A DNA stretch of 64,000 nt. Source: Mytilus edulis (Eukaryota). Shown here piece after piece: positions 1 through 63,600 of the stretch. Within the stretch, counting starts at the first letter, position 1; each line of letters begins with the position of its first letter. Position numbers and translations under genes: made by a program. The DNA is taken from assembly GCF_963676685.1 (NCBI RefSeq), contig NC_092352.1, forward strand, positions 43,338,001 through 43,402,000. Direction: 5' to 3'. The notes under the pieces were generated by a model. That model worked only from the letters and a program-made list of their open reading frames with translations. It did no database searches and had not been told where the DNA came from.

Positions 1-2004
1 ATGTATTGAAATTTATTAAAATCCATCTATTGATATACGTAAATAATTTTTGAATTGTATTTAACTTCTTATTTATTTGAGCATTTAAGATTGCTCATCT
101 AAATCAATTGTCTATTGTTATATAAATGTATTAATAGGCACACTTGAGGAATTGCGCTTAACGACTGTTTTATCGTGTGTTGCATGTACTGAAGATCACA
201 GTATTATGATATCAATGGTTGATTTAATAAGTGTATTTACATATTGTTTTATTATAAACAACTTAAAAATTGGTTGAATTATGAATAGCTTAGAACAGTC
301 AAACACACATTATACTGTAATGTTATATACCAAATTTTTTGGTTTCAAAAGAGGAGCATACTGGTTTGCCCTTGTCCATTCATCTGTCTATCTGTCCATT
401 ACACATCATCTGTCTGTCTGTCTGTTACACATTTCTTTCTTTTTTGAATTGGAGGAGTAGTTTTTAGGCCCAAATCAGATGTTTCCTTTTATTGTCATGC
501 AGCTTCTTTAAAAATAAATGTCTTCAAATTTTTTTTAAAGACATATTATATACTGTTGAGTTATGAAATTAGCAACTTATTCCAGATGGTGGTCCCAAGG
601 ATACTTCATTTATGGATACTCGGGCATGTACTTCTACAAGACTGTATGCCCAGTAATACAATTGCTACATTCTACATTCTGAAATACCCAAACATTGAAA
701 TTTAAGCATCTTGTTAAGTCAGTGTTTTTCATATAACAGGCTATTACTTTAATTATGGAATTTGCATAATTTCTTGTGCTTGAAATTTTTAAATAAATTC
801 CATGTTTATTTGGTATTATAATTTTTTGAGCGGTGCATAACACTTCCCATACAAAGTATTTTGTATAGATAGTGTTGTGCGCAGCACAGTACATTCCATT
901 GAAAATGTACTATTTTCTTCGTAATAGAAAGTGTTGTGGGCATCACAGAACATTGAAGTACAAAATAAAGATGGAATTTATTAAAAATTTCAAGCTTAGA
1001 AACTATGCAAATTCCATAATTAAAAATATTTCCAAGTTTAAATAATAGCCTGTTATATCAATAATCTTTGTTAGATCTATACAAGATACAAGATTGAAAG
1101 TTATTGTTGAACTTTTTTTTCAAAACTTATTACAAAACAGAGATGAAGTTATTAGGTACATATAGACTAGCATTATCAAATTGCATTCCAGTGCTATGAT
1201 TACTTCTCATCTGTAAAGATAACAGACTGTTCCCCTGTTAACTGTAATAGAATCTGGTATTTGTAGTTATTACATAATATACACTTATTATGCGACCATT
1301 TAAGTAGTGTTAACAAACAAAAATCATTAGGACTGTAACTAGAATACGTAGATATGTATTACTGTAGAATTCTAATGAGTTAATTTGATATGTATGCATG
1401 CTTTAGATTATATAAGTTAAGACATGAAACTATGGACTGAAATTTAAGAACAAATGTTTTTGTTTTTTATCCTACTTTTTAAAGAAGATAGTTTAACCTA
1501 TATCCCCCATGAAGAATTTGAATTACAGGTTTATACTCTTCACAAACCTGATGTTTGAAGATTTTTAAGAGAGAAAAGTTTTATGCAAATTAAATTCATT
1601 TTCATTTTAGTAATAGGAAACTTAAGAACTATCTTTAATCTTTCAATTTGATGCATTACCTATACTTAAAAAGTAGACCATAAAAGGTTAAGGTACCTTT
1701 TAGGCTGGTACCACCCGATTTTAATACCCCTGAGCAGTATATCATATAATTTATCTATTTTGGCAAAAATGTACAAATACCTCTATGCATGAGAGACGTC
1801 TATCTTCTAGATGGGAAGTTTGGATGTCTTTTAGGCCAAAGTGGTATCAGAAAAACCCAACAATATCAATTTTTGTTAAAATGGCACTGCAAAACTTAAA
1901 GCACTCACAGAGTTGCAGCCAGTGAAGCATGGTATAAGACAACTATTGAGTCAGAATGAATTGTAAAAGTTTGACTTAAGTAGAAGGCAAACAAGTCTTT
2001 TCCT

Positions 2005-2258
2005 TAGAGCTAATTTCCTAATGCACGTAGATTAGGACTTTGGTTGGCCTGCTTGCTTTGTTTGTACAAACATTGAATTTGGTTATTTGGTTATGTATTA
2101 ATGTCCATTAAAATCTAAATAAGATACTGGTTTAATTATGCTTAGTTATATTGATTGCAGATGTCAATCTTAATAACAATGCTTGAGCTAATGTTTATAC
2201 AAACAAAGCAAGCAAGTCAACCAAAGTATTAATCTACATGCATTAGAAAATGGCTCTA
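2005..2258. repeat. Foldback inverted repeat, ~70-bp arms (MITE-like)
   Basis: TAGAGC...TGCTTGCTTTGTTTGTACAAACATT vs AATGTTTATACAAACAAAGCAAGCA...GCTCTA. Confidence 0.75.
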
Positions 2259-2477
2259 ATCAGAATAGTTTTTCCCCCTTCTTAATCTGAAGTTGGTTGT
2301 CACTGGTTGCATGAACAATTGACTAATGTAGCAATGTTGTGAGAGTTGTAATCTGAAATAAGAACTTTTCATAAGATTTGTTTGCATCCATGCTATGGTG
2401 GTCTCGATTTATTGCAAAACCATTTCATCCAGAGTTTGATAAAAATAAATTACATGTTTTGCATTTTTTCTTTCCAG

Positions 2478-23751
<21,274 letters not shown>

Positions 23752-53100: not shown

Positions 53101-56100
53101 ATTTATAAATCATTAGATTCAGTAATCAATATTTACAATTTGAGATATTAAATATAATACAGTTATTTTGATACATTCACCATAACCACTTTACACATAA
53201 AGGAGTAAAAATGAAAGTGGCCACATCCGTGTTCATCCTCAACCTTTATATATGTTATGTATTATCATCAAATACAACTTACATTTCAATATTATGAATG
53301 AACACGAATGCGGCCACTTTCATTTAAGACGGAAACCGTCTGAAATTTAACTAAAATGCTAAAATTGTGAAGATTTCAGTAATTAAGCATGACTTAATGA
53401 TAGTACTACCCGATATATGTGCATTGTATTGTCAAAAACAGCCCATATTTGTGTAGCAGAAGCATTCTGCTTTCCAATAAATAGCTAAAAGATTACATTT
53501 TCACAATTTTGTACAACTGCTATATTTTGGGGCCAAAAAGGGTTCTTACTGAACCTACTCCATTAATACTGAAGATGTTTCATTTCATTTGTGCTGATTA
53601 ATAAAGGTTTTCATTGACAAATTGCTCTTAAATATTATGATGAAACAAAATTGAAATTCTAATATGACGTTCTTCTTTAGCTTTGGTATGGGTTTTAATA
53701 TGGGTAGGCATTATATTTGTCAACATTTAATACCTCGCTAGCACTCGGCATTAAAATATAGACAAATATAATGCCTATATAGCTACCCATGTTAAAATGA
53801 GCATAGAGCATGGCATGAAAGAATTTATTCTTAAATACAACAAGTGAAACTGCGAGCTACTGCTCACTGATGATACCCCAGCAGCAAGTGGATAATATTA
53901 ATAGTGTAAAAATATGCAAGTGTTCGGTAAACAGGAAGTTGTCGAGTGATGAATCTGAAAACGCATCACACGGTATAGCTGATTTATATAAATCCTGAAA
54001 CCAAATTTCAGAAATCCTTGTATTATAGTTCCTGAGAAAAATGTGACGAAAATCTTCACCTTGGCTATCATGTGTAAAATCATACAAGTGTCGGTAAACA
54101 GGAAGTTGTCAAGTGATCAATCTGAAAACACATCACACTGTATAGCTGACTTAGATAAACCCTGAAACCAAATTTCAGAAATCCTTGTATTGTAGTTCCT
54201 GAGAAAAATGCAACGAAAAATATTCATGGGACGGACGGACGGACTGACTGACGGACTGACGTAAGGACAGACAGAGGTAACACAGTATACCCCCCCTTTT
54301 TTAAAGCGGGGGTATAATTACTAGACTGTCACATATACTTCATAATATTTGTTTATATCCCTTTATTTTTAATACATCTTCAATCTATCAGATTTAAGAA
54401 ATCATTTTAGACAAACCACCGACCAATATTTCATTTCATGCTTTATGCCTAATTTATACACTGTTATAAACTAACTTGAGTTCTGCTTCTCGTTCAGCCT
54501 TCTCTCTTTCAAATCTTTTTTGTTCTTCTTCCATTTTCCTTTGAAATTCTTGTTCTTCACTTCTCCTGATTTACAGAGTAAAATCGAATTAACAAATTTA
54601 TTGTGAATGAAATTCATATGACATCCTGTTAGTATGATAGCCTCATTAGGAACCAATTTTTTCATTGACACGTACTACATGTGCTTGGGTATAAGTATGT
54701 GTTATATTTTGGTATCTATATGTGCATATACATGTAGGTACCAAATATTCTGTGTTAGCTACTTTACTGACCTATATTTTTTTCTGTGTGAGCTACTTTA
54801 CTGACCTATATTATTTCTGTGTGAGCTACTTTACTGACCTTGTTTCTTCTATATGAGCTACTTTACTGACTTTGTTTTTCTGTGTGAGCTAATTTACTGA
54901 CTTTGTTTTTTCTGTGTGACCTACTTTACAAACATTATTTTTCTGTATGAGCTACTAAACTGACTTAGTTTTCTCTATGTGAGCTATTTTACTGACTTTG
55001 TTTTCTCTATGTGAGCTACTTTACTGACTGTTTTCTCTATGTGAGCTAATTTACTGAATTTGTTTTCTCTATGTGAACTACTTTACTGACTTTGTTTTCT
55101 CTATGTGAGCTACTTTACTGACTTTGTTTTTTCTATGTGAGCTACTTTACTGGCCTATATTTTTTCTGTGTGAGCTACTTTACTGACTTTGTTTCTTCTA
55201 TGTGAGCTACTTAATTGACTTTGTTTTCTCTATGTGAGCTACTTTACTGACTTTGTTTTCTCTATGTGAGCTACTTTACTGACTTTGTTTTGTCTATGTG
55301 AGCTACTTTACTAACTTTTGTTTTGTCTATGTGAGCTACTTAACTGACTTTGTTTTCTCTATGTGAGCTACTTTACTGACTTTGTTTTCTCTATGTGAGC
55401 TTATTTACTGACTTTGTTTTCTACATGTGAGCTAATTTACTGACTTTGTTTTCTCTATGTGAGCTACTTTACTGACTTTGTTTTCTCTATGTGAGGTACT
55501 TTACTGACTTTGTTTTCTCTATGTGAACTACTTTACTGACTTTGTTTTCTCTATGTGAGCTACTTTACTGAATTTGATTTCTCTATGTGAGCTACTTTAC
55601 TGACTTTGTTTTCTCTATGTGAGCTACTTTACTGACCTTTGTTTTGTCTATGTGAGCTAATTTACTGACTTTGTTTCTTCTATGTGAGCTACTTTACTGA
55701 CTTTGTTTTCTCTATGTGAGCTACTTTACTGACTTTATTTTCTCTTTGTGAGTTATTTTACTGACTTTGTTTCGTCTATGTGAGCTACTTTACTGATTTT
55801 GTTTTGTCTATATGAGCTACTTTACTGACTTTGTTTTCTCTATGTGAGCTTATTTACTGACTTTGTTTTCTACATGTGAGCTAATTTACTGACTTTGTTT
55901 TCTCTATGTGAGCTACTTTACTGACTTTGTTTTCTCTATGTGAGCTACTTTACTGACTTTTGTTTTCTCTTTGTGAGTTATTTAACTGACTTTGTTTCGT
56001 CTATGTGAGCTACTTAACTGATTTTGTTTTGTCTATATGAGCTACTTTACTGACTTTGTTTTGTCTATGTGAGCTAATTTACTGACTTTGTTTTCTCTAA

Positions 56101-59100
56101 GTGAGCTATTTTACTGACTTTGTTTTCTCTATGTGAGATATTTTACTGACTTTGTTTTTTCTGTGTGACCTACTTTACAAACATTATTTTTCTGTATGAG
56201 CTACTAAACTGACTTTGTTTTCTCTATGTGAGCTATTTTACTGACTTTGTTTTCTCTATGTGAGCTACTTTACTGACTGTTTTCTCTATGTGAGCTACTT
56301 TACTGAATTTGTTTTCTCTATGTGAGCTACTTTACTGACTTTGTTTTCTCTATGTGAGCTACTTTACTGACCTTTGTTTTGTCTATGTGAGCTACTTTAC
56401 TGACTTTGTTTTTTCTATGTGAGCTACTTTACTGGCCTATATTATTTCTGTGTGAGCTACTTTACTGACTTTGTTTCTTCTATGTGAGCTACTTAATTGA
56501 CTTTGTTTTCTCTATGTGAGCTACTTTACTGACTTTGTTTTGTCTATTTGAGCTACTTTACTAACTTTTGTTTTGTCTATGTGAGCTACTTAACTGAATT
56601 TGTTTTCTCTATGTGAGCTACTTTACTGACTTTGTTTTCTCTATGTGAGCTTATTTGCTGACTTTGTTTTCTACATGTGAGCTAATTTACTGACTTTGTT
56701 TTCTCTATGTGAGCTACTTTACTGACTTTGTTTTCTCTATGTGAGGTACTTTACTGACTTTGTTTTCTCTATGTGAACTACTTTACTGACTTTGTTTTCT
56801 CTATGTGAGCTACTTTACTGAATTTGTTTTCTCTATGTGAGCTACTTTACTGACTTTGTTTTCTCTATGTGAGCTACTTTACTGACCTTTGTTTTGTCTA
56901 TGTGAGCTACTTTACTGACTTTATAAATATAATTAACACTTATTGTATGAATTCGGGATCTGAAATTTGAAAAAAATAAGTAAATCAAAAGATGCATGTG
57001 TAGGACTTAGGTGGAAGGGTAAACCCTGTTCTTATTGTTTTTACATGTAAACAGCACTTATGTGACGAGACTTGTGATTAAATAATAACATGTGTTTATC
57101 CACGGAGGCTTCCATTGTGTTGTGTGGTTGTAGCAGAACAAGACTATAGAGAGATTCCGAGTATCCAAATGTTTACATTATGAATACACAAGACTCCGCC
57201 TACAGGAATGTGAAATGTACAACTATGCCACACCCACTATTTACGTTAAAAAAAGTTAATACTGAGAGGAGAACTCACGATTAACACAAATAGTGTTACA
57301 TATAATTTTGCCTGGCGCAGTACAAAACTAAATAAAGAGAAAAGGTACATTTAAAATAAAAATATAAACAAGCTAACAAAAAAAGTAACTAAAGGTGAAA
57401 AAAAAAGAAAAAGTAGCATCATTTTTATTACAATGTTCCAATAAGTCTTGTGAGCGATAATTATTCGATTTTCAAAACGATCTCTATACTAGACGCGTAA
57501 TGTTTACGATCTTTTCTTTACGAGTTGGACGAAAGGTGGATCTTTCAAGTACACAAGTATGAATTTTCTTTTTTCCTCATTGGACATCTTGCTTCTCTCT
57601 GCCAGGAGTTCACCGCGACGAGCTGCAAGTGAGGGTGGGAGGTCCGGTACCACACTGTATCCGCACCCCCTAGGCAGTTTTGTGGCAGCACTAAGGATAT
57701 CATCCCTATCTATCAAGTTTGATAGCCTAAGGATTATATTGCGTTTCTTTTCAGGACCATTCGGCAATCTATGTACTGCTGTAAATAGCATACCTTTCAC
57801 CTGCGGAGCAGTAAACCCAAGCCCCTTTTTGTCATTATGCAACCATATACGGACGATGTTTTCAGTGACCTTAGGGGATTCACCGACTTTCCCCTCAATC
57901 CCACGGATAACCAAATTCCATTTTCTTCCCCACACCTCCAATTTCAGACGTTCATTCGCCTCCTCGGCAATGAGTGACTCCAAGTTGGGGATTTTAGAAT
58001 TGTGAATATCATGGAGCTCACCATTGGCAAACTCGGCCTGGTTTTCAAGAACTTTAACCCTCTCGTCGATCTGTTCTTGTTTTTCTTTTAGTTTCTCCAC
58101 TTCAGTATTTATATAAATATGTAGTTTCTGGAAACATTTCCCAATGTCGGCAAAATCTTTGCACTCATAATCAGCCATTGTTATTGTTTAAACAGGTAGA
58201 GGCGGGAATCGCCGATTAAAGACTGGTTAGTTAAGAAGATAATTGAATGAAAGTCACCTCGTTCAGTGTAAAAAGGAAATCCTATATGAATATTACGCTC
58301 TGTGTATTACTCTGTTTAATTGAAATGTTAAATATAAGGCAGATACAAACAATTTACCAGGAGCAATTTTTCTACACGTCTCACAACATGGCTGTCACCG
58401 GAAGTCTCTAACTTTTGTTTTGTCTATGTGAGCTACTTAACTGACTTTGTTTTCTCTATGTGAGCTACTTTACTGACTTTGTTTTCTCTATGTGAGCTTA
58501 TTTACTGACTTTGTTTTCTACATGTGAGCTAATTTACTGACTTTGTTTTCTCTATGTGAGCTACTTTACTGACTTTGTTTTCTCTATGTGAGGTACTTTA
58601 CTGACTTTGTTTTCTCTATGTGAGCTTATTTACTGACTTTGTTTTCTACATGTGAGCTAATTTACTGACTTTGTTTTCTCTATGTGAGCTACTTTACTGA
58701 CTTTGTTTTCTCTATGTGAGCTACTTTACTGACTTTTGTTTTCTCTTTGTGAGTTATTTAACTGACTTTGTTTCGTCTATGTGAGCTACTTAACTGATTT
58801 TGTTTTGTCTATATGAGCTACTTTACTGACTTTGTTTTGTCTATGTGAGCTAATTTACTGACTTTGTTTTCTCTAAGTGAGCTATTTTACTGACTTTGTT
58901 TTCTCTATGTGAGATATTTTACTGACTTTGTTTTTTCTGTGTGACCTACTTTACAAACATTATTTTTCTGTATGAGCTACTAAACTGACTTTGTTTTCTC
59001 TATGTGAGCTATTTTACTGACTTTGTTTTCTCTATGTGAGCTACTTTACTGACTGTTTTCTCTATGTGAGCTACTTTACTGAATTTGTTTTCTCTATGTG

Positions 59101-61813
59101 AGCTACTTTACTGACTTTGTTTTCTCTATGTGAGCTACTTTACTGACCTTTGTTTTGTCTATGTGAGCTACTTTACTGACTTTGCTTTTTCTATGTGAGC
59201 TACTTTACTGGCCTATATTATTTCTGTGTGAGCTACTTTACTGACTTTGTTTCTTCTATGTGAGCTACTTAATTGACTTTGTTTTCTCTATGTGAGCTAC
59301 TTTACTGACTTTGTTTTGTCTATTTGAGCTACTTTACTAACTTTTGTTTTGTCTATGTGAGCTACTTAACTGAATTTGTTTTCTCTATGTGAGCTACTTT
59401 ACTGACTTTGTTTTCTCTATGTGAGCTTATTTGCTGACTTTGTTTTCTACATGTGAGCTAATTTACTGACTTTGTTTTCTCTATGTGAGCTACTTTACTG
59501 ACTTTGTTTTCTCTATGTGAGGTACTTTACTGACTTTGTTTTCTCTATGTGAACTACTTTACTGACTTTGTTTTCTCTATGTGAGCTACTTTACTGACTT
59601 TGTTTTCTCTATGTGAGCTACTTTACTGACTTTGTTTTCTCTATGTGAGCTACTTTACTGACCTTTGTTTTGTCTATGTGAGCTAATTTACTGACTTTGT
59701 TTCTTCTATGTGAGCTACTTTACTGACTTTGTTTTCTCTATGTGAGCTACTTTACTGACTTTATTTTCTCTTTGTGAGTTATTTTACTGACTTTGTTTCG
59801 TCTATGTGAGCTACTTTACTGATTTTGTTTTGTCTATATGAGCTACTTTACTGACTTTGTTTTCTCTATGTGAGCTTATTTACTGACTTTGTTTTCTACA
59901 TGTGAGCTAATTTACTGACTTTGTTTTCTCTATGTGAGCTACTTTACTGACTTTGTTTTCTCTATGTGAGCTACTTTACTGACTTTTGTTTTCTCTTTGT
60001 GAGTTATTTAACTGACTTTGTTTCGTCTATGTGAGCTACTTAACTGATTTTGTTTTGTCTATATGAGCTACTTTACTGACTTTGTTTTGTCTATGTGAGC
60101 TAATTTACTGACTTTGTTTTCTCTATGTGAGCTATTTTACTGACTTTGTTTTCTCTATGTGAGATATTTTACTGACTTTGTTTTCTCTTTGTGAGTTACT
60201 TAACTGACTTTGTTTTCTCTATGTGACCTACTTAACTGACCTTTGTTTTTTTCTGTGTGACCTACTTTACTGACCTTTGTTTTCTGTGCAAGTTACTTAA
60301 CTGATCTTTATTAATTTTTGTGTGTGAGCTACTTAACTGACCTTTGTTTTTTTCTGTGTGACCTATTTTACTGAACTTTATTTTTTCTGTGTGACCTACT
60401 TTATTGACCTTTATTTCTGTGTGACCTATTTACTGACCTTAGTTTCTTTCTGTGTGACCTACTTTACTGACCTTTGTCTTTCTAATTCAATATCTGCCTG
60501 TGTATCAGCATTTCTCTGAGCTTCATCATCCAATATTTGTTGTATTGTTCTATCATTTCTGTGGTCTCCCATTACCCATACCCATTCTTTTCCATCCTTT
60601 CCATGCATGAAGCATACATTTTTCGTACCTGAAATTGCAAAATAATCTGAAACTGAGCAGATCTAGGATTGAAGGAAAGAAGTGTGTCATTGTCTGTAAT
60701 GGTAAAAATATCAGACAACCTAACCAGGTCATATTTTTATTGATGATTTTATGCTAGAAAATGATAATACAGAATATCAAGCAATTTTCTATGTGCAAGA
60801 GCCACAACTACCAAAGAATTCACTCATTTGGAAATAAATTCAAATCTGATCTGTATGATATAATCATAAACCAAATACTGTAAACCGACTTATTCTTATG
60901 GATACTTTTTTTTTATGTTTAGCTTTCCTTTTGAAGCTATCATGGCATCCATTTAGTTTCTTGATTTTTAAATCGACTTGATGTATTTAAATCCACATGC
61001 CCTACATTTTATATTTGCTTAATATTTCTACACACAAAAGTTGCAGTATCTAATCAATTCATTCAGAAATTATAGAAAATAGTGTGGTAAGTTGAGCACA
61101 CAGATGACAGACAGTGCAAACCTAAAATACCCTACAGCTTCTCCAGAAGTGTACTAATAACAATCTCTCAAATAATGAAACCATAGTACATGGGTTTTTC
61201 TGGATATTTTAGGGAAAAAATATCTTTGAGTGTTCTGATTAAAATATTTCCTGTTTCTGCTATATTTCATACATGTATGTCCTTTTTTTTAATTCAAGGT
61301 TTTTATCTTACAGCTTTATTTTGTCCCCTGCTGTGAGTTTTTAAAAATTTATTTATTTGAATTGGATCGGCAAGCCCTGGATAAACTTGCTTCCTGAATC
61401 TGGTATTGCATAAGTGTACATTTGTCAAAGTTGTTTTTGTCAGTCAGATATGATTCTAATCGGTTTTTACAAATAACTTGTTGTGGATTTTCAACATAAA
61501 AGTTTGTGGTAGAACAAAATGAGCATCGCTGTCATGAATTATGTAGTTTTGAGATAAATCAAAATTTAGAAAATTTAGGGGGGTATTTCCATTGGGAATG
61601 GGTCCAAATACCAGACCCTGTGGAATACCAGATAAATCCATGAAGTATAGCATAGTATTTCATTGGACTGTTGCCAAATATACAATAAAATACACCTTAC
61701 GTCTCCCACTTTCCTAAAACAAATATCAAACCTGGTTTTGATGGTTTTGTTGGTTTCCTTTTCTCATCTGCCTCTCTCTTATCTTCTTCCTGTTTCCATC
61801 TTCTCACTTGTTC
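35013..61813 (-). CDS. SH2D4: SH2 domain-containing protein 4 (SH2D4A/B-like) gene, multi-exon; first coding exon beyond window end
   Basis: Exons 61732-61813, 60472-60628, 54476-54565, 52646-52769, 46919-47081, 44674-44824, (42862-42873), 37373-37524, 36215-36435 and 35013-35132 join in frame. EQVRRWK, KEWVWVMGDH, IIAWFHDEE...AG and the C-terminal SH2 (WFHGII...YLVRVSE...CKHFLV) match the SH2D4 architecture. Confidence 0.92.
35198..35423. repeat. SINE-like repeat copy inserted into a TACTGTAAATTC-type MITE
   Basis: Core matches 38834-39093; host MITE ends at ~35162 and ~35575. Confidence 0.8.
36215..36435 (-). CDS. SH2D4: SH2D4 SH2-domain exon
   Basis: [47 protein letters not shown]...LILYHV; tttag| and |gtaagt. 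Confidence 0.96.
37373..37524 (-). CDS. SH2D4: SH2D4 exon (NSEKIKAHKRKSRPPRPQNRDAIIAWFHDEE...AEWFH)
   Basis: cttgcag| acceptor, |gtaaaa donor, phase 2-1; contains the start of the SH2 domain. Confidence 0.92.
38038..38164. mobile_element. Short GC-rich MITE, 5-bp TSD GAACT
   Basis: GAACT|CAGGCGCAGATCCAG...CTGGATCCGCCCCTG|GAACT. Confidence 0.85.
38453..38760 (-). mobile_element. ~300-bp HINE-like element
   Basis: AACAAGAATGTGTCC...GACGGAC tract...ATGCCCCTCTAC/GTAGGTGGGGCAT hairpin. Confidence 0.85.
38834..39093. repeat. Abundant SINE-like interspersed repeat (other copies ~2710-2875, 5449-5590, 35198-35423, 39210-39300, 46570-46900, 47238-47425)
   Basis: Shared core GGCCTTTTATAGCTGAC...GAAGGCCGTACGGTGACCTATAG...TTGTCTCATTGGCAATCATACC in both orientations. 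Confidence 0.85.
39609..39913 (-). mobile_element. ~300-bp HINE-like element
   Basis: Close copy of 38453-38760. Confidence 0.85.
40786..42168. mobile_element. Non-autonomous TIR transposon, 5-bp TSD ACTAG
   Basis: ACTAG|CAGGTGCGTAGCTA...TAGCTATGCCACTG|ACTAG; CGGGCGTACAC near both ends; contains a decayed HINE fragment and poly-G. Confidence 0.8.
41670..41694 (+). repeat. Poly-G run (~25 nt)
   Basis: Direct reading. Confidence 0.9.
42862..42873 (-). CDS. Candidate SH2D4 12-nt micro-exon (EDNG)
   Basis: tttattag|AGAAGACAACGG|gtaagt; phase 2-2, frame-preserving. Confidence 0.5.
44674..44824 (-). CDS. SH2D4: SH2D4 exon (EKRAKDAEVQMRQLARDAREE...KPPLPPK)
   Basis: ctctag| acceptor, |gtatgt donor, phase 1-2; PPLPPK is an SH3-ligand-like motif. 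Confidence 0.9.
45460..46494. mobile_element. hAT-like non-autonomous element nested in an older MITE
   Basis: Perfect TIR CAGGGCTTCCAAAA/TTTTGGAAGCCCTG; CTTTAAA on both flanks. Confidence 0.8.
46919..47081 (-). CDS. SH2D4: SH2D4 exon (KKFAVERRKSMERVE...PIWKEQ)
   Basis: ttttag| acceptor, AAG|gttggt donor, phase 0-1. Confidence 0.88.
47528..47648. repeat. Long hairpin within a ~330-bp palindromic MITE-like element
   Basis: TTGAATGC...TTTGTAACTTCAT..GTAAAAGCGTTGACC / GGTCAACGCTTTTAC..ATGAAGTTACAAA...GCATTCAA. Confidence 0.75.
48796..48959. mobile_element. Short GC-rich MITE
   Basis: CAGAGGCGGAT...ATCCGCCACTG termini; TSD not clear. Confidence 0.75.
50909..51579. mobile_element. piggyBac-type MITE
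   Basis: TTAA|CCCTTTCGCCGA...TCGGTGAAAGGG|TTAA; subterminal direct repeat GAGTCCCG.TTTACCGGGAT x2. Confidence 0.9.
52646..52769 (-). CDS. SH2D4: SH2D4 coiled-coil exon (RKEEEAALYASLKEAREAAK...VNDLR)
   Basis: ttttcag| acceptor, |gtaagt donor, phase 2-0. Confidence 0.9.
53200..53562. mobile_element. Degenerate Kolobok-like MITE
   Basis: GGAGTA...TACTCC termini; internal IR AATGAAAGTGGCC/GGCCACTTTCATT. Confidence 0.5.
53839..54318 (-). mobile_element. HINE/pearl-like element with two internal tandem units and ACGG/ACTG microsatellite
   Basis: Terminal hairpin, ATACCCC/GGGGTAT IR, duplicated core at 53910-54220, GGAC tract at 54228-54270. Confidence 0.8.
54476..54565 (-). CDS. SH2D4: SH2D4 coiled-coil exon (RSEEQEFQRKMEEEQKRFEREKAEREAEL)
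   Basis: atcag| acceptor, |gttagt donor, 90 nt, phase 2-2. Confidence 0.85.
54748..56922. repeat. 32-bp minisatellite array, left arm (~68 units)
   Basis: Consensus CTTTACTGACTTTGTTTTCTCTATGTGAGCTA repeated in tandem. Confidence 0.98.
57504..58178 (-). CDS. LINE-1 ORF1p-like protein (coiled coil + RRM + CTD; Transposase_22-like), 224 aa
   Basis: Intronless and intact. N-terminal heptad-rich segment, then RKWNLVIRGIEG (cf. RRxNLRIxGIPE), AVHRL (cf. RAHR), RNIILRL (cf. RPIIVRF) and VVPDLPPSLAARR (cf. DLSxExxxxR). Confidence 0.82.
   Translation of the reverse strand: MADYECKDFADIGKCFQKLHIYINTEVEKLKEKQEQIDERVKVLENQAEFANGELHDIHNSKIPNLESLIAEEANERLKLEVWGRKWNLVIRGIEGKVGESPKVTENIVRIWLHNDKKGLGFTAPQVKGMLFTAVHRLPNGPEKKRNIILRLSNLIDRDDILSAATKLPRGCGYSVVPDLPPSLAARRGELLAERSKMSNEEKRKFILVYLKDPPFVQLVKKRS
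58385..58405. promoter_or_regulatory. YY1-like (CAACATGGC) and ETS (CCGGAAGT) motifs at the element 5' end, candidate internal promoter
   Basis: caacatggctgtcaccggaagt lies at the element terminus. Confidence 0.5.
58408..60480. repeat. 32-bp minisatellite array, right arm (~65 units), running into the SH2D4 exon donor
   Basis: Same unit as the left arm; the terminal unit overlaps the exon 60472 boundary. Confidence 0.98.
60472..60628 (-). CDS. SH2D4: SH2D4 exon (GTKNVCFMHGKDGKEWVWVMGDH...IELERQ)
   Basis: tttcag| acceptor, AAG|gtcagt donor, phase 1-2; conserved WVWVMG motif. Confidence 0.93.
61732..61813 (-). CDS. SH2D4: SH2D4 exon (EQVRRWKQEEDKREADEKRKPTKPSKP)
   Basis: tttacag| acceptor, CAG|gtttga donor, phase 0-1. 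Confidence 0.9.
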
Positions 61814-63600
61814 CTGTAAAGAATACATATAATTTAATTCAGAAAAAAATTTGCCTTCTAATTGAGGCTAAATAAAACCAAACATTATAAGTAAATGACA
61901 GTCATTACAATAAAATAGGTAATCCATTAATACAAGGATCTCTGAGTTTCTTAAATTATCTCTTTAGTTTAAAAACTAGCAGTTATCATTTAACATGTTC
62001 AAACTAAAGAGAGGCTGCAAATACCATCAAAACAATCATATATTCAAATGTAAGGCAGTCATTGGCAGTGTTCTCCCCAGAAATTTTGGATAGCATCACA
62101 TTTGGCGTAAAAAAAATAAACTGTATTTTTTTCAATGTCATTTATCGTGTCGTGGCGATGCTCTATTTCCTTTACGTTATATATGTTATTGTTTGATGAA
62201 TAACATATTCTATTCCATCCTATTCTGAGTGTTTATATTGTTGAATTCTTTACTGAGAATACAATTAAACTATTACCATAATAACAGTATTTTCAGTTTA
62301 TGTTTACTATATTCATTTATAGTTACTTAATTATTTTTCACCTCTTGGGCCAAATAAAAATATATATGTTCAAGTTACCCTACCTACCCAACTAAATGAA
62401 TGAATGGGTTATCATTATTATAGAGCAAACTGTATAGATACAATTACACTAAATATCTAGGGAAAAAATGGTTCTTATCAAAAGAAAAAAAAGGGAAGAG
62501 AAAGTCTCATATGGCAATAAAATTTAAATTCAAAAACGTTTTCTTTATCATGTCTATGAAATATATTAGTTGATGTAACTCAATGAATTAGTCCCAGTTG
62601 TTTCTTTTTATCAAAATGATATATATTTTTAACAAAGTTATCTAACAAATAGTCTGTTAATGCGTGGTTTTCTCTTTAGGTTTTATTTTTTCTGTCTACT
62701 GTGCCATTTGTGCATCTGCAGCTATTATCATAAAATGCGGATTTTTGTTATATGGGCGTTTTTCAATAAAAACGTACTTTCTTGTCCCAGCCACTTTAAA
62801 AAAAATGTGTTTGATCTTTGCAAGTAATTTTTTGTGCAGTCAGTACATTGAATTAGATATAACATTTTTAAGTAAAGAAACAGTTTATTTTTTAGAGGGA
62901 TTGATAAGATATTGATTCCTGAATGGTCCAAAACAACCACAATGGCATGTCCCTAGACCGCCTGTTCAACATTCATACTCTCAAATATCGTAAAAAAATG
63001 TAGAAATAAATATTAATTTTACTTAATATAAGTTCTTTAATAATTCAAAAGTATGTTTAGAGCCAACATATTTTAATAAACAGCTTTTAACATAGGATTT
63101 TTTATTTTTAGAAGGTGTGTCCCTAACACAATGTCCACTACGAAACAAAGTCATTAAAACTTGCTTATAAACAGTTTTATAAAATCAATGTAATTTTTTG
63201 TTTGCAAGAGATATAAACATTAGGGTCTTACAAAAGAAATGATGCTTTTATAACGGCAATTAAACTGTTGGTAAGAAAAATTGAGCACATCAAATGGACC
63301 AGAGTGATACCGTATTTTTGTAAATGTCCACTACGAAACGGGTCAAATCTCCTTCAGTAACTGGTTTTAAAATTATGAAAAAAATATCAGTGTACAGCTT
63401 AATAACGCTTTGATGAATACAGTCAGTCTTGTTACTATTGCAATATTGGGGTTGTGAGAAAAAAATAAAACATGTGAATACGTCCCCTACGAAACGGTCC
63501 CCTACGAAACAAGTTTGGGAGAAAAAACGTTTCGTAGTGGACACTACCACTACCATGCAGTCTTTTTTTACTCTTTTTTCAATTATATTCGTGCAAAGCA

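What the first reader, a model, noticed from the sequence alone, without database searches (positions are those of the whole stretch)
56923..58407. ORF1-only, 5'-complete L1/Tx1-like element sitting inside a minisatellite
Seen: a 1.48-kb insert with sharp junctions, an intact 224-aa ORF with coiled-coil and L1-ORF1p-like RRM/CTD motifs, a short leader and a ~580-nt tail. There is no ORF2 and no poly(A). The flanks overlap in satellite register by 8 bp (CTGACTTT left, CTAACTTT right), like a target-site duplication with one mismatch. Known: target-primed reverse transcription usually truncates the 5' end, so keeping the 5' end and ORF1 while lacking ORF2 is the opposite pattern. ORF1-only 'half-L1' (HAL1) families are described in mammals, and several Tx1-clade elements target repeats. 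Inference: this is either a young non-autonomous ORF1-only retroelement family in an invertebrate, or a full element whose 3' part was deleted during array rearrangement.
Basis: partly seen in the sequence, partly recalled or inferred. Interest (0 to 1): 0.78.

Follow-up and report, generated by a model that had tools for sequence, protein, structure and literature searches.

The report
Lone 3'-truncated mussel L1 copy
This is a single copy of an ordinary, recently active mussel LINE-1-type jumping gene that has lost everything after its first gene, and it is not a new family of ORF1-only elements.

Summary
Window 56923-58407 (minus strand) is a 1485-bp insert with sharp junctions inside a 32-bp minisatellite. 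It has a 229-nt leader, an intact 224-aa ORF and a 581-nt tail, with no ORF2 and no poly(A).

The ORF folds as an L1 ORF1p (coiled coil, RRM, CTD). The 11 best Foldseek hits are all human L1 ORF1p.

The insert is positions 1-1485 of a ~6.9-kb L1-clade LINE of Mytilus edulis:
- The full element has ORF1, a 1.6-kb spacer, a 1262-aa APE/RT/zf-RVT ORF2, a 3'UTR and poly(A).
- All 14 other loci in the genome that hold position ~1485 run on past it.
- The family otherwise shows the usual 5'-truncated copies with a common 3' end.

There is therefore no HAL1-like family, and no target specificity: flanks of other copies are unrelated and the satellite is private to this locus. The 8-bp "TSD" is no more than register chance.

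One oddity remains. The insert lies exactly between two 99.8%-identical copies of a 1.3-1.6 kb block of the array. Whether the 3' part was lost by a later deletion (my preference) or by a one-step aberrant integration with a kb-scale duplication cannot be settled without other alleles.

The scan had not noted this element before on other DNA.

The parts
56923..58407 (-). 3'-truncated copy (element positions 1-1485 of ~6900) of an L1-clade LINE of Mytilus edulis
   Evidence: It is 98.9-99.2% identical to the 5' part of full-length copies. The other copies continue 3'. It carries 4 private substitutions in 1485 bp.
58179..58407 (-). 5' UTR, complete to the family's 5' terminus (within 0-2 nt)
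   Evidence: The 5' ends of 8 other copies begin at AGACTTCC, GACTTCC or ACTTCC next to unrelated flanks.
57504..58178 (-). ORF1, 224 aa, intact; an L1 ORF1p-type protein (coiled coil, RRM, CTD) with a private R207I change
56923..57503 (-). First 581 nt of the ~1.63-kb non-coding ORF1-ORF2 spacer; the copy stops here
   Evidence: Alignment to the full element L031:501-7402 ends at its position 1490.
54749..56922 (+). Left half of the locus-private 32-bp minisatellite
   Evidence: TRF; unit listing; pattern search, 71 of 71 matches at this locus.
58408..60483 (+). Right half of the same minisatellite
55311..56922 (+). Left copy of the duplicated array block that abuts the insert
   Evidence: 55311-55521 equals 58408-58618 (0 of 211 mismatches). 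55843-56922 equals 58619-59698 (3 of 1080 mismatches).
58408..59698 (+). Right copy of the duplicated array block; it lacks 10 units (321 bp) present in the left copy
   Evidence: Other long alignments within the array are only 97.0-98.4% identical.

Best explanation
The insert is one solitary, young copy of an ordinary autonomous L1-clade LINE family of Mytilus edulis. It retains the 5' UTR, ORF1 and the first 581 nt of the inter-ORF spacer, and it lacks the remaining ~5.4 kb (rest of spacer, ORF2, 3' UTR, poly(A)).

Shown: it is a fragment of a 6.9-kb element, and no other copy has this shape.

Inferred, most likely history: a full-length copy entered the minisatellite by normal target-primed reverse transcription, which gave the exact 5' end. 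A DNA-level deletion in this unstable array then removed the element's 3' part together with the adjoining array units. On this view the two near-identical array blocks now touching the insert are neighbouring copies of a regular kb-scale super-repeat whose intervening part went with the deletion.

The ORF1-only state is thus an accident of this locus. The locus cannot move by itself and has no 3' end that the family's machinery would recognise. At most it could still express ORF1p.
For: The full element:
- The full element is defined by two copies that align over 6.9 kb at 99.4%.
- It has ORF1 at 229-903, ORF2 of 1262 aa with Exo_endo_phos, RVT_1 and zf-RVT, and a common 3' end plus poly(A) of 9-26 A.
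- The window copy aligns to positions 1-1490 of it and nothing else of it is in the window.

This copy is the only one of its shape:
- All 14 of the 14 other loci holding position ~1485 continue beyond it.

The family behaves like a normal LINE:
- There were 674 first-look candidates. Of the 44 scored pieces, 29 end at positions 6897-6902 with varied 5' truncation points.
- TSDs of about 7-13 bp were seen in 3 copies.

Deletions are common in this family. Internal deletions occur in L008 (1304-2005), L012 (1195-6665), L015/18 (595-1007) and the C14 copy (3566-4094). A deletion with one end outside the element is therefore unsurprising.

The array has a regular higher-order structure of about 39 units (1249 bp between marker units) with older kb-scale duplications at ~97%. 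A super-repeat from which a middle part was lost is therefore plausible.
Against: - No allele with the full element or with the postulated lost array segment was seen.
- The history needs three recent events: the array duplication, the insertion and the deletion. The copy has only 0.27% private divergence.
- The 3' breakpoint lies immediately after a T-run (CTTT/G on the priming strand). By my count on the TRF consensus, only 4 of 32 positions in the unit follow a run of three or more T. That is what an endonuclease nick, rather than a random deletion end, would favour.
- The joint between the two identical blocks is out of the higher-order register. That is not what homologous unequal exchange produces if nothing was lost between them.
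Confidence: 0.55

Rival explanations
1. One-step aberrant retrotransposition. Reverse transcription started not on the poly(A) tail but at position ~1485. This could be internal priming at a nick or break in the array, or a template RNA that was 3'-truncated or oligo-adenylated there. It then ran to the RNA's 5' end. The cDNA was joined to a DNA end 1.3-1.6 kb away (a widely staggered second break, or a sister-chromatid end), giving a kb-scale target duplication with the L1 fragment at its joint.
For: - The insert sits exactly between two blocks with 3 mismatches in 1291 bp, while other array alignments are ~97-98%. Removing the insert and one block leaves a perfectly regular higher-order array.
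- The exact 5' terminus implies an RNA-length cDNA.
- The 3' junction follows CTTT/G, and the three A's after the element could be the target's own A's paired to a T-run primer.
[quoted passage not shown] L1 insertions at the joint of tandem duplications, through bridging to a break on the sister chromatid (PMC7058536). Duplications at L1 insertion sites (PMC11702581).
Against: - Such events are rare. Sen et al. retained 21 loci genome-wide, and 18 of them came with target deletions, not duplications (PMC1920257, passages).
- There is only 1 nt of possible microhomology at the 3' junction.
- There is no canonical AATAAA upstream of position 1485; the nearest lies ~25 nt downstream.
- No second copy ends there.
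- PMC1920257 itself warns that random deletions of L1 3' ends mimic this architecture unless the pre-insertion site is reconstructed, which I could not do.
Confidence: 0.3
2. A young HAL1-like, non-autonomous ORF1-only retroelement family that is mobilised in trans.
For: - ORF1 is intact and the 5' end is complete.
- HAL1 families exist in mammals (PMC5753468, passage).
- One other copy, L012, has an ORF1-plus-3'-end architecture with poly(A) and a TSD.
Against: - Only 1 of 15 loci stops at ~1485, and it has no poly(A) and no family 3' end.
- The L012 junction is unique: 1 of 40 scored pieces spans it.
- L012 is an old copy, 91-92% identical.
- The ORF1 region of L012 did not pass my start-motif check.
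Confidence: 0.02
3. Assembly artefact: a false join or haplotype duplication in a heterozygous satellite that placed an L1 fragment between two haplotype versions of the same array block.
For: - The two flanking blocks differ by 3 substitutions and one 321-bp indel, as two haplotypes might.
- No listed Logan contig from 4 runs crosses the 56922 junction.
Against: - The whole structure is 5.7 kb, within one long read.
- A string-graph join between satellite and L1 interior would need shared sequence, and there is none.
- A 62-bp contig of run X15 (58376-58437, no mismatch) crosses the 5' junction with 32 and 30 letters on the two sides, one letter short of the tool's bridging rule.
- The copy has 4 private substitutions not seen in other copies. 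Its reads are therefore not simply those of another copy.
Confidence: 0.05

Closest known systems
L1-clade LINEs (human/mouse LINE-1; 'L1-Tx1' elements reported across molluscs, PMC10294476 passages)
   Same: - Two ORFs. ORF1p has the coiled coil, RRM and CTD fold of human L1 ORF1p.
- ORF2p aligns over residues 5-1167 with human ORF2p, covering APE, RT and the C-terminal zinc region.
- Poly(A) tail, short TSDs, and mostly 5'-truncated copies.
   Different: - The ORF1-ORF2 spacer is ~1.63 kb. My recollection of tens of nt in mammals comes from no call.
- ORF1p is not recognised by Pfam Transposase_22.
- Placement in L1 proper versus Tx1 was not tested by a tree.
HAL1 (half-L1) non-autonomous elements of mammals
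   Same: Encodes only ORF1p (PMC5753468, passage).
   Different: HAL1s are families with their own ends and many copies. Here there is a single copy without a 3' end, poly(A) or convincing TSD.
Endonuclease-independent / non-classical L1 insertions (Sen et al. 2007, PMC1920257)
   Same: 3' truncation and absence of poly(A).
   Different: - Those loci lack TSDs and mostly delete target DNA. Here the flanks are duplicated over 1.3-1.6 kb, and the break follows a T-run.
- The pre-insertion state, which that study required, is unknown here.
L1-mediated tandem duplications in human tumours and L1-expressing cells (PMC7058536, PMC11702581)
   Same: An L1 fragment lies at the joint of a direct duplication.
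   Different: Those carry the L1 3' end with poly(A) at an EN motif and are somatic and kb-Mb in size. Here the fragment is 5'-complete, 3'-truncated, germline and inside a satellite.

Membership tests
L1-clade LINE (the family this copy belongs to) | ORF2 with N-terminal APE-type endonuclease | tested here: met
   In full copies: PF03372 E 1.7e-9 over residues 8-227; L1 EN structures at E 2e-21. Absent from the window copy.
L1-clade LINE (the family this copy belongs to) | Reverse transcriptase plus C-terminal Cys-rich region, collinear with L1 ORF2p | tested here: met
   RVT_1 E 1.4e-31 and zf-RVT E 7.4e-9. Residues 5-1167 align with 9-1158 of human ORF2p at E 4.6e-90.
L1-clade LINE (the family this copy belongs to) | ORF1p of the coiled coil, RRM and CTD type | tested here: met
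   Profile versus PDB: 2yko at E 2.8e-4. Model pLDDT 86.4. The 11 best Foldseek hits are human L1 ORF1p, E 6e-7. Pfam itself gives no hit.
L1-clade LINE (the family this copy belongs to) | Poly(A) tail, short TSDs, 5'-truncated copies sharing one 3' end | tested here: met
   For the family: (29 of 44 pieces end at 6897-6902). Not met by the window copy itself.
L1-clade LINE (the family this copy belongs to) | Phylogenetic placement of the RT within L1 rather than Tx1 or another clade | not tested
   No reference set of clade RTs was available; only PDB sequences were compared.
HAL1-like ORF1-only family | Several copies with the same ORF1-only structure and the same ends | tested here: not met
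   1 of 15 loci with position ~1485 stops there.
HAL1-like ORF1-only family | Own 3' end with poly(A) and TSDs showing retrotransposition of the short form | tested here: not met
   There is no A-run at 56923. The 8-bp register overlap has a mismatch and is expected by chance in a 32-bp array.
Tx1-type target-specific LINE | Copies inserted at the same target sequence | tested here: not met
   Flanks of 11 other copies are unrelated. The satellite occurs only at this locus, 71 of 71 matches.
Endonuclease-independent L1 insertion (criteria of PMC1920257) | 3' truncation and no poly(A) | tested here: met
Endonuclease-independent L1 insertion (criteria of PMC1920257) | No TSD, and a junction unlike the EN consensus | tested here: inconclusive
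   The junction follows CTTT/G. The flanks are duplicated over 1.3-1.6 kb.
Endonuclease-independent L1 insertion (criteria of PMC1920257) | Pre-insertion site shows that the 3' flank starts unchanged (this excludes a later deletion) | not testable with these tools
   No other allele or assembly could be reached.

The most novel reading that the evidence does not exclude
A germline, one-step, 5'-complete but 3'-truncated L1 integration in a mollusc. It was primed inside the RNA (or on a truncated RNA) at a nick or break in a private minisatellite, and it was resolved with a 1.3-1.6 kb duplication of the target. That would be a natural example of L1-driven tandem duplication and of non-classical priming outside mammals.
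Probability: 0.3. Interest if true: 0.45.

Novelty: new member of a known kind. Interest (0 to 1): 0.2.

Why it matters
The main value is as a correction. An apparent "ORF1-only retroelement family in an invertebrate" turns out to be one damaged copy of a normal L1-type LINE.

Useful by-products:
- The full 6.9-kb structure of a recently active L1-clade family in Mytilus edulis.
- Structural confirmation that its Pfam-invisible ORF1p has the L1 ORF1p fold.
- One locus where population long-read data could show whether L1 integration itself can duplicate kilobases of a satellite in a germline.

Tried and rejected
- Pfam on ORF1p gave nothing usable, and single-sequence PDB search gave nothing. 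Only the profile and the fold search worked.
- I tested whether L009 (which appeared to end ~40 nt further on, just after an AATAAA) was a second 3'-truncated copy made by premature polyadenylation. Rejected: it is interrupted by nested insertions and continues to at least position 3705.
- I tested whether L008, L011, L014/L020 were truncated. Rejected: they have an internal deletion or a nested insertion and continue.
- I tested whether L012's ORF1-plus-3'-end form is a family. Rejected: its junction is unique.
- I looked for a second haplotype of the locus in the assembly with 2 kb of each unique flank. Only dispersed repeats matched.
- I looked for displaced pieces of the element elsewhere in the window. 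None.
- Reads. All four runs were Logan contigs. In 4 of 4 the contig reaching 56922 continues into the full-length element, so these are other copies. One 62-bp contig of X15 crosses the 5' junction. None of the listed pieces crosses the 3' junction, 33 pieces were not listed, and absence in contigs proves nothing.
- A divergence clock does not separate the models. There are 4 private changes in 1485 bp, against 3 differences in 1291 bp between the blocks.
- The earlier-findings index had nothing by sequence or by words.
- Supplementary files of the papers were not consulted. The supplementary tables of PMC1920257 and PMC7058536 may list TSD and duplication sizes that bear on how unusual a 1.6-kb duplication is.
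- I did not search for a paper naming this Mytilus family beyond (9 papers, none on it). I therefore make no claim that it is unpublished or absent from repeat libraries.
Full report
WHAT IS THERE.
- Reading the window confirms a 1485-bp non-satellite insert at 56923-58407 inside a tandem array. The array has period 32 bp, not ~40, and about 68 + 64 units at 54749-56922 and 58414-60483.
- On the minus strand the insert carries a 229-nt leader, an intact 224-aa ORF (57504-58178) and a 581-nt tail.
- It has no second ORF and no poly(A).
- The left flank ends CTGACTTT and the right flank begins CTAACTTT. These occupy the same eight positions of the repeat unit.
- That overlap is real. But any two breakpoints in a 32-bp array give an overlap of 0-31 bp, so it carries no weight as a target-site duplication.

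THE PROTEIN.
- Pfam sees nothing in it. A single-sequence search of PDB sees nothing either.
- A homology search found 55 proteins with E <= 0.001 among 768 candidates. The best is 100% identical and named by its source as Mytilus edulis. Others come from M. coruscus, M. galloprovincialis and Pinctada.
- A profile of 34 of these (alignment A1) hits human LINE-1 ORF1p (2yko) at E 2.8e-4, across the coiled coil and RRM.
- The AlphaFold model built on A1 has mean pLDDT 86.4. It shows a long N-terminal helix followed by two alpha/beta domains.
- Its 11 best Foldseek matches in PDB are all human L1 ORF1p (E 6e-7 to 6e-5, TM 0.33-0.69). Generic RRM proteins follow at E > 3e-3.

THE DECISIVE TEST.
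- A search of the window's own genome with the insert scored all 28 first-look candidates.
- Orienting the near-full matches showed the following. Seven copies (L002-L007, L010) have a shared sequence running on at the point where the window copy meets satellite. Six of these align with the seventh over 1230-1500 bp of 3' flank at 92-99% identity.
- Extending four copies to 10 kb defined the whole element. Two copies align from their first base over 6.9 kb at 99.4% identity.
- The element has ORF1, then a ~1.63-kb spacer without long ORFs, then a 1262-aa ORF2. ORF2 carries Exo_endo_phos, RVT_1 and zf-RVT domains, and it aligns over residues 5-1167 with human L1 ORF2p at E 4.6e-90.
- A ~580-nt 3' UTR follows, ending in a fixed motif and poly(A) of 9-26 A.
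- The window copy equals positions 1-1490 of that reference and stops inside the spacer.
- Fifteen loci in the genome include element position ~1485, and the 14 others all continue:
  - L002-L007 and L010.
  - L013/16, L015/18, L028 and L030.
  - L009, after nested insertions.
  - L014/20 and L011/23.

THE FAMILY IS ORDINARY.
- A search with the full element gave 674 first-look candidates. Of the 44 scored pieces, 29 end at positions 6897-6902, with 5' starts scattered from 1 to 6775. This is the classic 5'-truncation pattern of target-primed reverse transcription.
- Short TSDs of about 7-13 bp are visible in three copies (L012; L034; L044).
- Flanks of 11 other copies are unrelated to one another. 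The 32-bp satellite exists nowhere else in the assembly: 71 of 71 matches with up to 2 mismatches lie at this locus. There is therefore no repeat targeting.
- The family looks recently active. Contigs of four public runs end the element's 5' terminus in different flanks, and the best copies are 98-99% alike.
- The window copy has four private substitutions in 1485 bp, seen both in the copy comparison and against all four runs. One of them gives R207I in ORF1p.

OTHER ORF1-ONLY SHAPES.
- L012 is an older copy (91-92% identical) in which positions 1195-6665 are missing. Its 3' end, poly(A) and a TSD are present.
- Its junction is unique: 1 of 40 scored pieces spans it. It is a single internally deleted copy, not a family.
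- Internal deletions are frequent in this family (L008, L015/18 and the C14 copy).

HOW THE 3' PART WAS LOST.
The array has a higher-order structure of about 39 units (marker units recur at 54915, 56164 and 58940).

The first 1291 bp of the right flank (58408-59698) match the last 1612 bp of the left flank (55311-56922):
- There are 0 of 211 and 3 of 1080 mismatches in the two aligned parts, plus one 10-unit gap.
- Other long alignments in the array are 97.0-98.4% identical.

The insert thus lies exactly between two near-identical blocks. I see three readings.

(a) Two-step.
- The array was a regular super-repeat, block - spacer units - block.
- A full-length element inserted normally next to the right block.
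- A later deletion removed its 3' 5.4 kb together with the spacer units.
- This needs no unusual mechanism and fits the family's many deletions, but it needs three recent events.

(b) One-step.
- cDNA synthesis began at position ~1485 and ran to the 5' end.
- It was joined to an end 1.3-1.6 kb away, duplicating the target.
- This is favoured by parsimony of events and by the regular array that results when one block and the insert are removed.
- It is also favoured by the 3' junction lying right after a T-run (CTTT/G). By my count on the consensus, only 4 of 32 unit positions follow three or more T.
- Human precedents exist for its parts:
  - 3'-truncated, poly(A)-less insertions (PMC1920257, passages read).
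  - L1 at the joint of tandem duplications (PMC7058536 and PMC11702581, passages read).
- Such events are rare, there is only 1 nt of microhomology, and no polyadenylation signal lies upstream of the end.
- PMC1920257 itself notes that random deletions mimic this architecture unless the pre-insertion site is known.

(c) Conversion.
- Out-of-register conversion between the two half-arrays, bounded by the insert, would explain the blocks but not the truncation.

I put (a) at about 0.55, (b) at about 0.30, an assembly artefact at about 0.05, and the family idea at about 0.02.

WHAT THE READS SAY.
- Only Logan contigs were available.
- In 4 of 4 runs the contig that reaches 56922 runs on into the full-length element, so it derives from other copies.
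- One 62-bp contig of run X15 crosses the 5' junction without mismatch (32 + 30 letters, one short of the tool's bridging rule).
- No listed contig crosses the 3' junction, and 33 pieces were not listed.
- This neither confirms nor excludes the truncated junction in other samples.

COMPARISON WITH KNOWN THINGS.
- The element is a member of the L1 group of LINEs by ORF2 collinearity, ORF1p fold, poly(A), TSDs and truncation pattern. L1 proper versus Tx1 was not tested by a tree.
- 'L1-Tx1' elements are reported as among the most widespread LINE types across molluscs (PMC10294476, passages).
- The element is not a HAL1-like element. HAL1 is defined as a non-autonomous L1 derivative family encoding only ORF1p (PMC5753468, passage).
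- It shares two of the four criteria of endonuclease-independent insertions. The other two are inconclusive, and the key control is not available.

VERDICT.
- The thing is ordinary. The only point of interest is the kb-scale duplication around a 5'-complete, 3'-truncated copy, which population long-read data could resolve.
- An earlier first-stage note on the same stretch (s1-832424) concerns the satellite itself. I confirmed its period and copy number, but I did not test its splice-site origin.

Noticed in passing
L012:1502-2897 (G000:C9:58747779-58749175): A single older copy (91-92% identical) with an internal deletion of element positions 1195-6665. It keeps the 5' UTR and ORF1 region plus the last 236 nt, poly(A) and a ~10-bp TSD. 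This is HAL1-like architecture, but the junction is unique in the genome.
   Followed up: yes
L031:1404-3035 (full-length copy): The ORF1-ORF2 spacer is ~1.63 kb and has no ORF over 58 aa except a 102-aa low-complexity ORF. That ORF overlaps the ORF2 start by 4 nt (ATGA). It is open in 3 of the 4 copies checked and has no Pfam hit. This is a long spacer for an L1-type element.
   Followed up: partly
window 54749-60483: The 32-bp satellite has a higher-order repeat of about 39 units (~1.25 kb) with marker units at 54915, 56164 and 58940. It is private to this locus (71 of 71 matches). Another first-stage note (s1-832424) reads it as built from an exon's 5' splice site. I did not test that.
   Followed up: partly
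window 53833-54320: A ~485-bp dispersed repeat with 7239 first-look candidates in the genome, at 93-97% identity. It overlaps a 167-bp tandem duplication found by TRF at 53904-54219. It is probably a high-copy SINE- or MITE-like element.
   Followed up: no
window 62066-62500: Another dispersed repeat (1011 first-look candidates, 75-83% identity) lies just right of the array.
   Followed up: no
window 58385-58407 (element 5' end): The first ~25 nt of the element hold a CCGGAAGT-type and a GCCATGTTG-type motif. They recall ETS and YY1 sites, and a YY1 box near the start of human L1. That recall comes from memory and no call; nothing was tested.
   Followed up: no
loose ends at 58405-58409: Contigs of four public runs continue from the element's 5' terminus into different flanks. 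One is the L005 locus and the others are not among my loci. This suggests insertion polymorphism of full-length copies among individuals or species.
   Followed up: no
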